From Haliotis cracherodii (Eukaryota), in contig NW_027266273.1 of assembly GCF_022045235.1 (NCBI RefSeq), forward strand, positions 7,564,001 to 7,628,000: DNA of 64,000 nt. The letters run 5' to 3'. This document shows positions 13,710 through 60,010 of the stretch, piece after piece; positions within the stretch are counted from its first letter, which is position 1, and each line of letters begins with the position of its first letter. A program made the translations under genes and the position numbers. The notes beneath the pieces are model-generated. The model searched no databases and had not been told where the DNA came from. It worked only from the letters and a program-made list of their open reading frames with translations.

Positions 13710-13995
13710 GGGCACGGGTGGCCCAGTCGTCTAAGGCGCCGCGATTCGCTGTGCAGAGTTGCCTCCCTTGGGCACGCCAGAAACCTATGGTTGTGGGTTT
13801 GAATCCCGGTTCGCCCCGATTATGTTTCTAGGTTTGTCAGCACCATACCCGTGCTCGTGGGTTTCACCGAAGTGGTAAACGTCTGAGACCTGCGTCACTT
13901 CGGGCTTTCCTCCCACATTAAGCTGACACGCCGTGATATGACTGGAATACTGTTAAAAGCGGCGTTAAACCCAACTCACTTACTTACTCACTCAC
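13710..13995 (+). mobile_element. SINE family C, full length
   Basis: A box TGGCCCAGTCG, B-box-like GGTTTGAATCC about 65 nt later, TTTCCTCCCAC motif, shared tail, (TCAC)n; TSD core TCTAAATG. Confidence 0.93.
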
Positions 13996-15431
13996 TCTAA
14001 ATGCCGTTCTAAGACTTGAACATGTTTTAAATTCGTTATCATTATATAATAAATGGACAGATTTTCAGTCAATTTGTAAAATAAGTGAATATTTAGGCGT
14101 TTAATAAATTGCCAAAATGTTAATTTTGGTAATTTTACACTTTGAGTACAACATATACACACGATAGAATAAGCAATGCTCACGTGAAATATATAGTTTG
14201 TGTTACAAGTCAAAATAGTGTAAACTAAAATCGCACGATACCAAGCAATTGACTTATCAAAACGTCGTCACCATTACCGATGCTACGCCCTTATACTATC
14301 ACTAAAAGCGATACATGCGCTTACTGTTGGCGCAACACAGGTCGGGAACTAGTCGATATTTCTGGGATATCATACGGGTACTCATGGGTGAAAACAATAA
14401 CAAAGTCATCAAACAGCCCAGGGGAATTGATGTAGGTCAGCGCTCCTTTGATACACTGGCCGTATAGGTGACATTATCGGATATGTCACATCTACTAAGT
14501 TCGTTGATCAAACTGTTGATGTAGTGATGCTTACATGGCATGTTTATGTTATTTGAGGCCATGTAAGCGGGAACAACTACAAACATGTCATGTAGGGCAG
14601 CCAGACTCCGGATGACAGCTAGCTGGGACAGGAGGGGTTTATTTAAACTCTGTTTCCTCTTTTTTTAGTTTGTATTTCTACCAATCACAACATGAGGCAG
14701 TGATTAACCCACTCTGAAAGACATTCAACAGCTTCCTCTTCTCTTTTGGCCCGTTGTTTGTCATATAAAAATGGCCTTATCATTCTTTAAAGAAATACAT
14801 TTATTTCTGTAAAATGGCATGTCATGAGTGCTATAGATATAAATATAGTTCTCCAGCACGTCATGGATAGGTTCCATTCACGATTGGAATTGTAACACTG
14901 ACTTGTCTTCAAAATGTCATTATTATACATACATGTATGTATTTGCTAAATTTAGACGTAATAATGTTTGTTTGTCGGTGGAAAAGGAAAACTGGATATT
15001 CTGAGAGACCATGTTTATACTGTCATGTTAACCATACTTTACACGAAGAGGAAGATTATCACATGCTGATGTTATGTAAACGAAGTATGTTTCCATCTGT
15101 GGATGTTTTCTGCTGTTACTTCCGTGTAGCGTCACTAAGACTGATGTGGTTTATTTGTAAACATACTCGTTGTGTGAACCCTTTTACTTGTTTATGTTAT
15201 AACTATCAAGCCTTGGTTGTTTTGCTACACTGTTTACAGTATGTTGAAAACATTTGTCTGTCATATTGATACGCAAGTTTTCTGTAAGTTTCTGTACAAT
15301 TTGAATTTTCTGGTACTGACAAAGGACCCCATCATGCGGTATGCGAAGAAGAAATGTACCCTTGTGTGTGACTCTCTGCGAACAATATCACCCGCGGTAG
15401 ACGTGGTCTCCGGTATAATAGGTTCAAAGCT

Positions 15432-15489
15432 GTGAGTGAGTGAGTTTTACGCCGCTTTTAACCATATTCTAGCATTATCACGGCGGGGC
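15432..15489 (-). mobile_element. SINE family A tail fragment
   Basis: (TGAG)n followed by TTTTACGCCGCTTTTA...ATCACGGCGGGG. Confidence 0.75.
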
Positions 15490-15740
15490 TTCTGATGTAA
15501 TATGCCTTACTCAAGAGAAAAGGCTTAATGGCTAATTTAGGATGATCATAAACTTAAAAAGCGCTTTGCTAACGTTAAGGTAAAATTATTTCTTGGGTAG
15601 TAAACGTCTGTTGAAGACAGTTGAACTATCATTATTAAGAATTTATTTAATCAAAATTCTTCGGTCTGTAATATGTGAAGAGAAGTGTTTTCAGTATCAT
15701 TCAAACACGTTTCTTAATAATTGGGATGTTGGGCGTGACA

Positions 15741-16068
15741 GACCACCTCCGTGGTCTAGTGGTAGAGCGTCTGCCGGGAGAGCGGGGGTTCGAACCCCGG
15801 CCGCATCATACCAAAAGACGTTAAAAGATGGTACTTGTTGTTACCCTGTCTGGCGCTCGGCATTAAGGGGCTAAAACAAGGACTGGTCGGCTCGGAGTCA
15901 GTATACTGTGTCCGAGTGGGGTATTCATGTTAAACTGCAGAATGGTATCTCAGTGGGCTAGCACTATAAACTCGGCATTAATCCGGACTATTACAAGCAA
16001 TTACACACAGCACGTCGCTATATAGTGCAACAATGTTGGACGCGACGTTAAATTCCATTTCACCTCAC
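15741..16068 (+). mobile_element. SINE family B (tRNA head + Meta/MESC-like domain), near full length
   Basis: A box TGGTCTAGTGG, B box GGTTCGAACC, central CATACCAAAAGACGTTAAAAGATGGTACTTGTTG...GCATTAAGGG, tail TTTCACCTCAC. Confidence 0.92.
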
Positions 16069-17479
16069 ATTTTCAAACGACAAATAACACCTCTTTTCTA
16101 TCAAGTGACAATTGACAATTAAGTAGCGTTTCTTTTAAATGTATAACATTCTTAATGTGGCAGTCTTGTTGATAAAGAACTAAAGACCCCAAACCGTGAG
16201 TCACTGCATAATGATTATCTGTTCCCAACATCCCCCAAGCATCCAACTGCAAGCGCAACAGAACCGTTCTCGGACACATTCTGTTACCTCGCCAAAACGC
16301 ACGCTTCATCACCCTTACGTATCAATGTGCCCTGTCAAGCGGATCCAACAGAAGGGGGAAGGATGGACTAATTTGTAATGAAAACTTTGCCTTCATTTTT
16401 CTTATGTCTAAGCTGTCAGAAGGCTATTATAACAAACATTAAATTACCACCGATTAGGCCATTTTGCCACAACATGAAGCTTAAAAAAAATAAACACCGC
16501 GCCAAGTTCGCGTGTGATCCGAAAACTTGCTCCAGGACAGAAAACAACGACACACGGTAGAAAAAACTGCAAATCTGAATTTCGAAAAATAGGAAAACAG
16601 TATCACTTTACACGCAGGTGAGGAGGTAGAATATGCAAATCCCCCTATAAACACATATATGTTATTATTGCTTGTACCCACATAATACAGGCTAATTTCA
16701 TTACTTTTGCACCGTTTAATCTGTTGTTCTCCATACATTGTCTACCTTTCTTGTAATTTATCGTCATGATAATTTTCAAATTACCCGTCACAACAGAAAG
16801 GCGCTAAATGTTAATCAGTTTGTCAACAGAATGCGCTGAGCACGTGCCTTGTCCAAACATACCTTTACAGTTGGTAGCGGTCGTGAAGTGAGAGCGCCGT
16901 TCAGGATGAGTGGGATATTTCAAAGTCTTGAAGTTTTACCTCAACCTGGTCGGAACTCACATATGGTGTGTTCTTGTGGAATTATCGGCAGAAACGAAGC
17001 TTCTTTTTTATTTTATTTTGAAGAAATGGCACATAACCAAATGCCGACAAAAAATATACAGTGAAAAATAATATCCACAACATATGGCTTTATACCGTGA
17101 AGTGAAGTGGGTGTTTCGCCGTTTTTTATGTTTTTGTCTGGAATTAAAGAAAAGAAATTATCATAAATTGTTTGATTCTCTAATGGAACGTGCTATCGAT
17201 GACACAAAGCAACACAATAAACTTGGGATCGCGAAAGGATATATATGCAAATGAGTCCACCTGGTAGGAACTACTTTTGTTAAGATCCATACATCTTGAC
17301 AATTGTCTCAATAAGCTACTGCAATACGTTGGAAAAATGTTTGATGAAAGGTGCCCCGATGTGGGTGTGTTTTTGTAAACAAGCACATGGCCGCAAGTCA
17401 TTTGGCACTATACTACCTGGGCTGGTTTACTCAGGCAGTGTATTCATACGCGGCTACTTCAGTGTATCTTAAACTGGAC

Positions 17480-17580
17480 GAGAACAATAGGCTCCACACT
17501 TTGTACCCATATGGCATGGACAACCGAACCCGGGCCTCTCGGCGTTACTCGCGAACACTGGAGTCACTGGGCTACCCATA
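17480..17580 (-). mobile_element. SINE family A, highly decayed
   Basis: GGCTCCACACTTTGTACCCAT...CGAACCCGGG...CACTGGGCTACCC. Confidence 0.6.
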
Positions 17581-58079: not shown

Positions 58080-58454
58080 TCCGGAAAACAGAGAACCAAG
58101 TGAGATACTTACAAGACTGGTAAGATCTAAACCCTCGAGATATTGTGGACTCGTGTACTCTTTGAACGGGTGTAAACCAATTATCATTGGTGTCGTTTTA
58201 CCCATCCTCGAGACTCCAGTGTATTATATCTCTATTCTGTTGAGGAAGATAACCGGAGCCCATTCACAACCCAAGCCACGTTTCAGAAGTGATGTCACCA
58301 CCGCCACCTCCCCTATTTCTCTTAGCATAGATTGATCTCGCTTGCATGAGTGTAACGGCTCCATAAGGTGTCAACAGAGCTTTGTCAGAGACTGGTCATT
58401 GATTACAGGGGTGGGGGTGAGATAAAAAAATGACACAGCGAAAGAAGGGGAGTT

Positions 58455-58492
58455 GTGTGTGTGTGTGTGTGTGTGGGGTGGGGGGGGGGGAG
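58455..58492. repeat. (GT)n plus poly-G
   Basis: Direct reading. Confidence 0.9.
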
Positions 58493-58848
58493 GTGCTGGG
58501 GTTGTTGTTTTTTTGCAAAATGAAATAACAGATTAAAGAAAGTATTATTTTGAAAGAATCGACTGGTCCTTAACCTTTTTGATGAATATATAAATTTAGA
58601 ATAAACATATCTTCATAAATAATAATCTATGTAATACGTTCAAGCATTTTGTGTCACTTTTTCTGCCTTCTGCTGTGGCCTTGACCCTTGATGGATAATC
58701 GTTTGGATTTTCAAAATCTTTGATTTCAAAATTTAGAATATATCTTAACCGAATACGGTGCACGAACGTTTTAATTACTTGGTTTTTTTTCGTGTCACTT
58801 GTAATTTAATCCGTGAGACTGTATTAAGTAAATTTTAATTCAGTGTCA

Positions 58849-59117
58849 GGAGAGTGGAAGGTCCGGGGTTCGACCCCCGACCGCGTCATACCAAAAGACG
58901 TTAAAATATGGTACTTGTTGTTACCCTGTCTGGCGCTGGCGGGGCTAAAACAAGGACTGGTCGGCTCGGAGTCAGTATACTGTGTCTGAGTGGGGTATTC
59001 ATGTTTAACTGCGGCATGGTATCTCAGTGAGCTAGCACCATAATCGGCATCAGTCCGGACTAGTACAAGCAGCCACACACACACGTGCATGCACGTCGCT
59101 ATATAAGTGCAAAAATC
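58849..59117 (+). mobile_element. SINE family B, both ends clipped
   Basis: Near-consensus body. Confidence 0.92.
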
Positions 59118-59660
59118 TAAGATCAATAAAATGATCTTTTACTTTTGGAATGTACTTGTCGATGTCTTCAACGACGTAATGTTGACAAACTGCAAGCACT
59201 GTGTGCTTGATATCGACACGTTAACGGCATTCTCCTGACGGTATAAGTGATATGGACATGCCATAGACACACTCCCCAGAATGATATCAGCATGCCTTGA
59301 TATGCTCGTGGCACTCCATGAGTAATATCGACATGATAATGACATACACACTGCCATCTATGAAAGATACCGTTTCAATATTGACATACTCTCTGCACTT
59401 TAATATAACAATGATCTAAACATTTCGTTGACTCTTTACCAGTGACAACGACATGTTAGAGACAATATTACGAAAGGCAATGCCATTATATAGACACACT
59501 CCTTGCACCTTACGTGTAATATCGACATGATATAGATCTGGTCCTAACGCCTTAAACAGCGATCACACACTGCGTAGACAACCATGTGCCCCGCAGCATC
59601 TGGTATCGACTTAATCTGACATAGTAACTGTCAATCATGAGAGATATCAAACTATTACAG

Positions 59661-60010
59661 GTGAGGTGAAATGGGGTTTAACGTCGCGTCCAAGATTATT
59701 GCACTTATATAGCGACGTGCATGTAAGTGTGTGTGTTTGTGTGGCTGCTTGTACTAGTCCGGACTGATGCCGATTTATAGTGCTAGCTCACTGAGATACC
59801 ATGCCGCAGTTTAACATAGAATAAATATACCCCACTCAGACACAGCATACTGACTACGAGCCGACCAGTCCTTGTTTTAGCCCCTTTATGCCGAGCGGGT
59901 AACAACAAGTACCATCTTTTAACGTCTTTTGGTATGACGCGGTCGGGGATCAAACCCCGGACCTTCCGCACTCCGGGCCGACGCTCTACCACTAGACCAC
60001 GGAGGCGGTC
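59661..60010 (-). mobile_element. SINE family B, full length
   Basis: TSD AAACTATTACAG/AAACTGTTACAG (59649-59660, 60011-60022). Confidence 0.95.

What the first reader, a model, noticed from the sequence alone, without database searches (positions are those of the whole stretch)
13928..59718. Four unrelated retroposon families end in one covarying 38-nt two-stem hairpin (shared LINE-recognition element)
Seen in sequence, element sense, layout outer stem / 4 nt / inner stem / 9-nt loop / inner stem / 3 nt / outer stem. A (44862-44899, -): CCGCCGT gata TTGC tggaatatt GCTA aaa GCGGCGT. C (13928-13965, +): ACGCCGT gata TGAC tggaatact GTTA aaa GCGGCGT. D (31833-31870, -): CCGCCGT cata TAGC tggaatatt GCTG agt GCGGCGT. 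B (59681-59718, -): ACGTCGC tata TAAG tgcaataat CTTG gac GCGACGT. The spacer between outer stems is exactly 24 nt in all four. The outer stem shows a C-G to U-A swap in B, and the inner stem changes UAGC/GCUG, UGAC/GUUA, UAAG/CUUG while keeping pairing (A has one U-U mismatch). The loop UG(G/C)AAUA is conserved. Each is followed by T(T/A)AAAC and a family-specific microsatellite: (TCAC)n, (AAAC)n or (TCACC)n. Established: stringent-type LINE RTs recognise a 3' stem-loop plus terminal microsatellite that SINEs borrow. Inference: a modular system in which at least four heads parasitise one LINE clade, with stem and microsatellite variants possibly encoding partner specificity. My recollection points to an I/Nimb-type LINE; this is unverified.
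Basis: partly seen in the sequence, partly recalled or inferred. Interest (0 to 1): 0.8.

Follow-up and report, generated by a model that had tools for sequence, protein, structure and literature searches.

The report
SINE tails borrowed from abalone LINEs
Several very abundant short mobile elements in this (probably abalone) genome all end in the same small RNA hairpin, which also ends a group of autonomous LINE elements that most likely copy them; this is a well-known kind of genomic parasitism, and here the partner LINE group is identified.

Summary
The four tails sit exactly where stated. The window holds 23 pattern matches against 0.34 expected, and the genome about 202,000.

At least four head types (A, B, C, D) carry the tail. 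Copies show target-site duplications and 5' truncation.

Across seven lineages the two-stem fold is kept: 92% of cells are paired, and 6 of 11 pairs show compensatory changes.

The partner type was found. A group of LINEs ("P group") has endonuclease, RT and RNase H domains and open ORF2 frames of 1226-1257 aa. Three of its lineages end in the same hairpin, T(A/T)AAA, a short linker and (ACTC)n.

Two other LINE families of the same superfamily end in a looser version of this design with other microsatellites.

Not shown:
- a LINE whose stems match the SINE stems letter for letter;
- LINEs ending in (AAAC)n or (CACCT)n;
- Nimb versus Ingi placement;
- any functional effect.

The principle is established, and shared mollusc SINE tails with Nimb partners are in print. 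This is a new member of a known kind. Another first-stage note (s1-826581) reported the same tail-sharing elsewhere in this genome.

The parts
44862..44899 (-). The whole element is about 44839-45005 and has a tRNA-like head.
   Evidence: Sequence. R1 score 75.6 bits. Rfam tRNA match at 44929-45000. A 7-nt flanking repeat TGAAGCT lies at the family-typical distance of 107 nt but is not significant on its own.
13928..13965 (+). The whole element is about 13707-13995.
   Evidence: Sequence. R1 score 71.4 bits. Flanking repeat TCTAAATG, read by eye, lies 222 nt before the hairpin, the family C distance.
31833..31870 (-). This is a 5'-truncated D copy with a family A element inserted at its 5' edge.
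   Evidence: Sequence. R1 score 69.6 bits. The neighbouring A copy has a 10-nt TSD, TAAAAGGTGG.
59681..59718 (-). The whole element is about 59660-60010, with a tRNA-like head, an internal CA-rich run and a (TCACC)n end.
   Evidence: Sequence. R1 score 63.2 bits. Flanks GTAACAGTTTG and GTAATAGTTTG, read by eye, lie at the family B distance.
23523..23685 (+). Family A copy with a 13-nt TSD.
   Evidence: TGGAAGAGTTTCC; 0 of 200 shuffles reach it. Rfam tRNA match at 23528-23599.
31436..31612 (-). Family A copy with a 12-nt TSD.
   Evidence: Rfam tRNA match at 31543-31601.
31970..32136 (-). Family A copy with a 10-nt TSD, inserted at the edge of the D copy at 31828.
   Evidence: Rfam tRNA match at 32058-32129.
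43550..43591 (-). Family A tail.
44377..44418 (-). Family A tail. Its 3' flank is the same as that of the copy at 31464.
57629..57670 (+). Family A tail, a degraded copy.
15444..15485 (-). Copy truncated a few bases before the hairpin (5' truncation), with an A-type tail.
18248..18540 (-). Family C copy with a 13-nt TSD.
56967..57250 (-). Family C copy with a 10-nt TSD.
57844..57885 (-). Family C tail.
60702..60743 (+). C-like tail, a degraded copy.
33241..33515 (-). Full-length family D copy with a 12-nt TSD and no tRNA head.
37089..37130 (+). Family D tail.
39131..39172 (+). Family D tail.
   Evidence: It lies 169 nt clear of the gap at 38524-38662.
43250..43291 (+). Family D tail.
24463..24817 (-). 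Family B copy with a 10-nt TSD.
   Evidence: Rfam tRNA match at 24743-24814.
6432..6473 (-). Family B tail.
20288..20329 (-). B-like tail, a degraded copy.
16008..16058 (+). Further family B tail, found only by the covariance model.
   Evidence: 33.6 bits. Sequence seen.

Best explanation
The hairpin, the T(A/T)AAA(C/T) box, a short linker and the microsatellite together form the 3' end module of a group of autonomous LINEs (here called the P group). These LINEs belong to the RNase H-bearing I superfamily, which in molluscs means Nimb or Ingi.

At least four SINE-like families carry copies of this module behind different heads: tRNA-derived heads in A, B and C, and a non-tRNA head in D. The inferred mechanism runs as follows. 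The LINE ORF2 protein binds the conserved hairpin, chiefly the invariant AUAU spacer and the UG.AAUA.U loop, which the stems hold in place. The terminal microsatellite then pairs with the nicked target, and the RNA is copied into the genome by target-primed reverse transcription. Any RNA carrying the module is mobilised in trans.

Shown here: the shared module in SINEs and LINEs, compensatory stem changes, target-site duplications, 5' truncation, very high copy number, and young open-frame LINE copies.

Inferred by analogy with the eel UnaL2/UnaSINE1 pair and other stringent LINE/SINE pairs: that the protein recognises the hairpin, and that the microsatellite primes.
For: LINE ends:
- Three copies of a LINE with a 1230-aa open frame (P1, on three contigs) are 99.4-99.5% identical through ORF2 end, about 465 nt of 3'UTR, CATCGC-gatat-GGC-tgcaatatt-GCC-gat-GCGATG, TAAAAT, CATA and (ACTC)n. 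They diverge right after that.
- P2 and P3 end the same way with stems CGTCAC/GTGACG.
- R1, a model built only from SINE tails, scores these LINE ends at 34.5 and 30.2 bits (E 2e-7 and 2e-6) on the ORF strand.

LINE identity:
- The P2 copy aligns over residues 3-1226 of P0116 at 46% identity.
- P0116 carries Exo_endo_phos, RVT_1 and RNase_H domains.
- 32 of the 38 P-group ORF2 matches have no stop.

Structure:
- The minimum-energy fold is the two-stem hairpin in 6 of 6 tails folded.
- Over 7 lineages, 91.9% of cells pair, against 26-64% with slid partners. 6 of 11 pairs change on both sides (6 of 500 shuffles reach this). RNAalifold predicts 6 + 3 bp on its own, with 6 of 9 pairs compensatory.

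Tail similarity and mobility:
- The A tail is 76% identical to the P1 tail over 54 nt (best of 500 shuffles 69%), with the same linker and (ACTC)n.
- 7 of 22 window copies have exact 10-13-nt TSDs at family-specific distances, and one copy is truncated just before the hairpin.

Abundance and context:
- 202,178 SINE-type and 3,915 LINE-type tails genome-wide, with controls at 0.
- LINE-X, its sister families and LINE-Y, all RNase H-bearing, end in stem-loop, T(T/A)AAA(C/T), linker and other microsatellites. The design is therefore a feature of the wider clade.
Against: - I found no LINE with the exact SINE stems CGCCGU/GCGGCG or CGUCGC/GCGACG. A test for SINE-type stems behind the LINE-type TTCT context gave only 10 matches genome-wide.
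- I found no LINE ending in (AAAC)n or (CACCT)n.
- Tail identity for C, D and B against P1 and P2 is 64-71%, no better than the best shuffles.
Its LINE nature rests on the 1230-aa open frame, the RVT_3 match, and its ORF2 end and 3'UTR being related to P2.
- The covariation rests on only 7 lineages, with few independent events, and the structure was derived from these same sequences. The measure 'further pair types' is not above shuffles (459 of 500 reach it).
- Folding z-scores are modest, -1.9 to -3.2.
- Nothing functional was tested.
Confidence: 0.8

Rival explanations
1. The most abundant LINE in the genome, LINE-X (1260-aa ORF2), mobilises these SINEs through relaxed recognition. On this view the P-group resemblance is only shared ancestry.
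For: LINE-X dominates both the RVT_1 and the RNase_H searches and has many open frames. Its end has the same general design: a 7-bp stem, TTAAAT, a linker and a microsatellite.
Against: The X hairpin has a 21-nt interior of different sequence and no supported inner stem (z -1.3). It ends in (GTAA)n or (CATC)n, not (ACTC)n. R1 finds no match at the 3' end of any of the 8 X copies examined or of the 3 copies of the 1266-aa sister family (L069-L071). Its only hit across the five loci, at 13.5 bits, is a degraded D-type tail about 65 nt past the LINE end in L073. P-group ends match the SINE tails far better.
Confidence: 0.08
2. The hairpin is kept by common descent alone, as a tail module passed between SINEs by template switching. 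Alternatively it serves the SINE RNA itself, for example stability or 3' end formation, rather than LINE recognition.
For: Tail exchange between SINE families is documented in molluscs (passages read in PMC4758252 and PMC11481361). Within-family copies are dead copies and say nothing about selection. No binding data exist.
Against: The same module ends autonomous LINEs with open frames. Changes between lineages keep the pairing. Loop and spacer positions are invariant over 7 lineages although the stems changed.
Confidence: 0.07
3. The direction of borrowing is reversed: P-group LINEs picked up their 3' end from an abundant SINE.
For: SINE-type tails outnumber LINE-type tails by roughly 50 to 1. 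LINE-X has demonstrably captured a D fragment in its 5'UTR.
Against: Three P lineages that differ by 23-33% in their 3'UTRs all end in the module. More distant LINE families of the superfamily share the design. This points to an ancestral LINE feature. Either direction gives the same working mechanism.
Confidence: 0.05

Closest known systems
[quoted passage not shown] 2014. Both are cited in passages I read in PMC4824008; their content is recalled.
   Same: A SINE and a LINE share a 3' stem-loop followed by short terminal repeats. The stem is needed as structure, loop bases are read by the protein, and the repeats serve in priming.
   Different: The LINE clade differs: L2, without RNase H. The hairpin and the repeats have different sequences. 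That system was tested experimentally; here nothing was.
BivaV-SINE1 with the Myes-2 Nimb LINE in scallop, and Nimb-related tails of V and Meta SINEs in bivalves (PMC11481361, passages read).
   Same: Mollusc tRNA-SINE families of different superfamilies share a 35-61-bp tail homologous to the 3' end of I-superfamily (Nimb) LINEs.
   Different: Those are bivalves, not a gastropod. The passages I read give no secondary structure or covariation for the Nimb tail. I could not see their alignments (supplement), so I cannot say whether it is the same hairpin.
HalSINE1 (Haliotis discus), LitSINE1 and four bivalve SINEs that share one 3' tail (PMC4824008, passages read).
   Same: An abalone SINE shares its tail with other SINE families, and the authors infer one LINE clade as partner.
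   Different: The partner was unknown to those authors. The figure is not held, so identity with families A or C could not be checked.
Haliotis MESC SINEs and LP-SINEs (PMC4758252, passages read).
   Same: MESC SINEs of Haliotis have an internal (CA)n and end in (CACCT)n, like family B. LP-SINEs of Haliotis lack a tRNA head and share a tail with oyster SINEs, like family D.
   Different: The paper calls these tails of unknown origin, or mobilised by an as yet unidentified LINE. Here a candidate LINE group is given. I could not compare the sequences themselves.
CR1-14_CGi with BivaV-SINE2 and BivaCORE-SINE1 (PMC4824008, passages read).
   Same: The stem-loops of a mollusc SINE tail and its LINE are related by compensatory changes.
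   Different: That is the CR1 clade, with a different hairpin.

Membership tests
SINE/LINE pair with a shared 3' tail (stringent type, Ohshima and Okada) | A short non-coding element with a Pol III-type head | tested here: met
   Rfam tRNA matches over the gathering score lie on the heads of four A copies and one B copy. C has a split tRNA-like head (read by eye, no Rfam match). D has none.
SINE/LINE pair with a shared 3' tail (stringent type, Ohshima and Okada) | Insertion by target-primed reverse transcription: variable TSDs and 5' truncation | tested here: met
   7 of 22 copies have exact 10-13-nt TSDs at family-specific distances (p<=0.015). A copy truncated just before the hairpin lies at 15444, and a truncated D copy at 31828.
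SINE/LINE pair with a shared 3' tail (stringent type, Ohshima and Okada) | The 3' tail is homologous to the 3' end of an autonomous LINE of the same genome | tested here: met
   LINE P1, P2 and P3 ends match the SINE-built model. A against P1 is 76% identical over 54 nt. No LINE has stems identical to the SINE stems.
SINE/LINE pair with a shared 3' tail (stringent type, Ohshima and Okada) | The LINE protein recognises the tail and mobilises the SINE in trans | not testable with these tools
   This needs a retrotransposition or binding assay.
I superfamily LINE (Nimb or Ingi in molluscs, PMC10294476 passage) | ORF2 with AP endonuclease, RT and RNase H | tested here: met
   LINE-X ORF2 has these domains. 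So does P0116, to which 38 P-group frames align end to end at 45-47% identity. The RVT_3 (RNase H-like) match lies inside the 1230-aa P1 frames. The RT of P1 itself was not read.
Nimb clade | Placement of the RT domain with reference Nimb elements in a phylogeny (RTclass-type test, recalled) | not tested
MESC SINE of Haliotis (family B) | Internal (CA)n and terminal (CACCT)n, as described for Haliotis | tested here: met
   Read and compared with the description in PMC4758252.
MESC SINE of Haliotis (family B) | Presence of the MESC central domain | not testable with these tools
   The domain sequence is only in a figure, which is not held.
LP-SINE (family D) | A head homologous to the first ~70 nt of a Nimb LINE 5'UTR | tested here: inconclusive
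   The head shows no similarity to the LINE-X 5' end (score 18; shuffles mean 14.4, max 24). The 5' ends of P-group LINEs could not be fetched.

The most novel reading that the evidence does not exclude
The abalone genome hosts a radiation of I-superfamily LINE lineages that each carry a two-part 3' address: a hairpin whose stems differ between lineages, and a lineage-specific microsatellite. SINE families would survive by re-addressing themselves, swapping stem pairs or the microsatellite to switch between LINE partners. The stem variants and the (ACTC)n, (AAAC)n and (CACCT)n ends would then be a partner-specificity code rather than neutral drift.
Probability: 0.2. Interest if true: 0.55.

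Novelty: new member of a known kind. Interest (0 to 1): 0.3.

Why it matters
It names a concrete candidate partner, an I-superfamily LINE group with young open-frame copies, for SINE families that together number about 200,000 preserved tails in this genome. The papers I read left the partner of the gastropod tails unidentified.

It also gives a compact, testable RNA module: a 6 + 3 bp hairpin with an invariant spacer and loop, T(A/T)AAA, and a microsatellite. This could be used to study how RNase H-bearing LINEs choose their template. That question has been worked out experimentally mainly for L2-type elements.

For genome annotation, it explains a large share of the interspersed repeats and of the (ACTC)n microsatellites in this species.

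Tried and rejected
1. LINE-X as partner. The top 150 RVT_1 and top 150 RNase_H matches are one abundant LINE group. Its 8 full copies and 5 further 3' ends carry a different hairpin with (GTAA)n or (CATC)n, and R1 finds no match at any of these LINE ends. The one weak R1 hit (13.5 bits, L073) is a degraded D-type tail a short way past the LINE end. Rejected as the direct source.

2. LINE-Y (1243-aa ORF2). It was found through a diverged tblastn hit and the P0004 probe, and its end was confirmed on 4 copies plus 4 relatives. It has the same design but ends in (CAA)n. 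Not the partner.

3. Looking for LINE 3'UTRs among all tails in the 356 kb I held. Of 102 pattern matches, 41 were A, 23 D, 17 C and 7 B, with two pairs and 10 singletons; about four of these are chance matches by eye. None lay behind X-like coding sequence. One singleton later proved to be the LINE P3 end. This sample is biased: 30 loci were chosen as best R1 matches and 38 as LINE loci.

4. Matching the 150 representative proteins against held DNA to see which families live in this genome gave nothing beyond LINE-X.

5. Earlier notes of the scan gave leads but no coordinates.

6. The D head against the LINE-X 5' end showed no similarity.

7. SINE-type stems behind the LINE-type TTCT context: 10 matches genome-wide, no LINE family.

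8. The organism could not be named. Run and organism names are coded. 'Abalone' rests on earlier AI notes and on family B fitting the published Haliotis description.

9. The alignment printed used too loose a pattern, mixed A and D tails, and was not used.

10. I did not open supplements, which are closed. Supplementary Fig. 1 and Table 2 of PMC11481361, and figures 5E of PMC4824008 and 1 and 3A of PMC4758252, may already show this very tail. My statement that the structure and the abalone partner are not in print rests only on searches and on the passages read.

Full report
OBSERVATION. The pattern CGYCGY-N24-RCGRCGTWAAAC with up to 3 mismatches occurs 23 times in the 64-kb window, against a mean of 0.34 and a maximum of 2 in 100 shuffles. 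I aligned 22 of the 23; the match at 33661 lacks the 5' arm and was dropped. R1 finds 33 matches at E<=1 in the window, 29 of them at E<0.001; the 22 training copies match by construction. No tail or element touches an N run.

HEADS AND MOBILITY. All-against-all blastn of the 395 nt upstream of each tail gives these groups:
- A: about 108-nt body, 7 copies.
- C: about 222-nt body, 4-5 copies.
- D: about 205-nt body, 5 copies.
- B: about 293-nt body, 4 copies.
- One copy cut off just before the hairpin.
Cross-links between groups come from overlapping flanks of neighbouring elements. Rfam tRNA matches over the gathering score lie on four A heads and one B head; ARAGORN calls none. Seven of 22 copies have exact flanking repeats of 10-13 nt (at most 3 of 200 shuffles reach them), and each lies at the family's own distance from the hairpin. 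These are the marks of LINE-type insertion. Median pairwise identity of bodies in the DNA I held is 0.90 for A (39 copies), 0.75 for C (12), 0.73 for D (17) and 0.79 for B (4). That sample is biased towards well-kept tails.

ABUNDANCE. The genome has 1.18 Gb in 80 contigs. The pattern TGSAATANTNNTNNNNGCGRCGTWAAAC with up to 1 mismatch occurs 202,178 times, and the reversed-pattern control 0 times. R1 had about 1.06 million first-look candidates, a rough number; 150 were scored and all matched.

STRUCTURE. The minimum-energy fold is the two-stem hairpin in 6 of 6 tails folded (A, C, D, B, P1, P2). Z-scores run from -1.9 to -3.2, and family A forms only two inner pairs. On the 22 window copies, 81% of cells pair against 31-56% with slid partners, but most of that variation is decay of dead copies. 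The fair test is between lineages. In the alignment of A, C, D, B and the LINE ends P1, P2 and P3:
- 91.9% of cells pair, against 26-64% slid.
- 6 of 11 pairs have changes on both sides (6 of 500 shuffles reach this).
- The covariation score is 0.52 against 0.29 in shuffles.
- The measure 'further pair types' is not above shuffles.
RNAalifold, given no structure, predicts 6 + 3 pairs, 6 of them with compensatory changes. Twenty columns are invariant, among them AUAU before the inner stem and UG.AAUA.U in the loop. Limits: there are seven lineages and few independent events, and the structure came from these sequences.

LINES THAT ARE NOT THE SOURCE. The best 150 RVT_1 and RNase_H matches belong to one abundant group, LINE-X. 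It has an ORF1 of about 590 aa and an ORF2 of 1260 aa with endonuclease, RT, RNase H and a weak zinc-binding match. Eight copies end in CGTGTGC, 21 nt, GCGCACG, TTAAAT, CTCCAAA and (GTAA)n, and diverge after that. Sister families end in the same hairpin with (GTAA)n or (CATC)n. R1 finds no match at any of these LINE ends; its one weak hit (13.5 bits) is a degraded D-type tail about 65 nt past the LINE end in L073. LINE-Y (1243-aa ORF2, 36% identical to X in the C-terminal part) ends in AGGTCAGCC...GGCGACCT, CTTAAAC, ACCTAATG and (CAA)n on 4 copies and 4 relatives. So stem-loop, T(T/A)AAA(C/T), linker and a lineage-specific microsatellite is a design of the wider clade. X and Y are not the direct source of the SINE tail.

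THE PARTNER TYPE. A probe with RVT_3, which X matches poorly, brought up other RNase H-bearing frames. I fetched 700 nt downstream of eight of them and found the following.
- Three copies of a family with a 1230-aa open frame (P1, on three contigs) carry CATCGC-gatat-GGC-tgcaatatt-GCC-gat-GCGATG, TAAAAT, CATA and (ACTC)n on the ORF strand, about 465 nt after the stop. They are 99.4-99.5% identical up to the microsatellite and unrelated beyond it.
- P2 ends in CGTCAC...GTGACG, TAAAGC and (CTCA)n.
- P3, a decayed copy in L067 that is 77% identical to P2 over 593 nt of ORF2 end and 3'UTR, ends in CGTCAC-tatat-...-GTGACG, TTAAAT, TTTA and (ACTC)n.
R1, built from SINE tails only, scores the P1 and P2 ends at 34.5 and 30.2 bits. 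The P1 C-terminus aligns end to end with P0116. P0116 has endonuclease, RT and RNase H domains. Used as a probe, it finds 38 frames of 1226-1257 aa at 45-47% identity over residues 2-1227, 32 of them without a stop, and the P2 copy is among them. LINE-type tails number 3,915 genome-wide with a control of 0; of the first 100 listed, 11 have P1 stems and 89 have P2 stems. The A tail is 76% identical to the P1 tail over 54 nt (best shuffle 69%) and has the same CATA linker and (ACTC)n. C, D and B against P1 or P2 give 64-71%, no better than the best shuffles.

WHAT IS NOT SHOWN. I found no LINE with the SINE stems letter for letter. A search for such stems behind the TTCT that precedes all three P-type hairpins gave 10 matches. 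I found no LINE ending in (AAAC)n or (CACCT)n. Nimb against Ingi was not tested. Recognition by the LINE protein is inferred by analogy.

LITERATURE. I read passages, not whole papers.
- PMC4758252: Haliotis MESC SINEs have an internal (CA)n and end in (CACCT)n, which fits family B. [quoted passage not shown]
- PMC4824008: HalSINE1 of Haliotis discus shares its 3' tail with LitSINE1 and four bivalve SINEs, partner unknown. Compensatory stem changes are shown there for CR1 and L2 tails.
- PMC11481361: bivalve SINE tails of 35-61 bp match CR1, CR1-Zenon, L2 and Nimb LINEs, including BivaV-SINE1 with a Nimb LINE of scallop.
- PMC10294476: Nimb and Ingi are the only I-superfamily clades found in molluscs.
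Searches listed no paper naming the abalone partner or describing this hairpin. Figures and supplements, which I could not see, may show it.

VERDICT. The finding is a good, clean example of a known principle. The new content is the partner LINE group in this genome and the covarying hairpin of an I-superfamily tail. Earlier first-stage notes of this scan report the same tail-sharing on other windows of this genome.

Noticed in passing
L066:2195-2600, L067:2135-2186, L068:2527-2578 (5'UTR of LINE-X): Three LINE-X copies carry, at the same place upstream of ORF1, an antisense 5'-truncated family D fragment of about 90 nt, tail included. It lies between two copies of a ~130-nt segment of the LINE's own 5' end. 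The LINE lineage has therefore captured a SINE fragment and now copies it along.
   Followed up: partly
L075 (a LINE-Y end on contig C45) and L082, L084: LINEs sit directly behind one another. A LINE-X 5' start follows the Y microsatellite within about 10 nt. A tail-only LINE-X fragment is fused to a Y microsatellite in L082, and L084 has two Y 3' ends in tandem. Earlier notes of the scan describe stacked LINE insertions in this genome.
   Followed up: no
window 31436-31505 and 44349-44418 (minus strand): The A copies at 31464 and 44377 have the same microsatellite length and the same 20-nt 3' flank. The copies at 43550 and 44377 share 99% identity over 295 nt upstream. This looks like local segmental duplication rather than independent insertions.
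   Followed up: no
window 31828-32136 (minus strand): A family A element with a 10-nt TSD sits exactly at the 5' edge of a truncated family D copy.
   Followed up: partly
L063:3668-3792: Two family A tails lie head to head about 20 nt apart and form a long inverted repeat.
   Followed up: no
window 46619-47155 (minus strand) and 10595-10833: The 178-aa 'ORF' at 46619-47155 runs across two N gaps and is an artefact. One more N run, 10595-10833, lies outside the finding's span and inside the 205-aa ORF at 10536-11153.
   Followed up: no
L014:101-145 (plus strand): A tail with the usual 3' half, AAAAGCGGCGTAAAGC plus (ACTC)n-like repeats, has a different 5' half (GCAGCCC...GGGCT hairpin). It may be another tail variant or a rearranged copy.
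   Followed up: no
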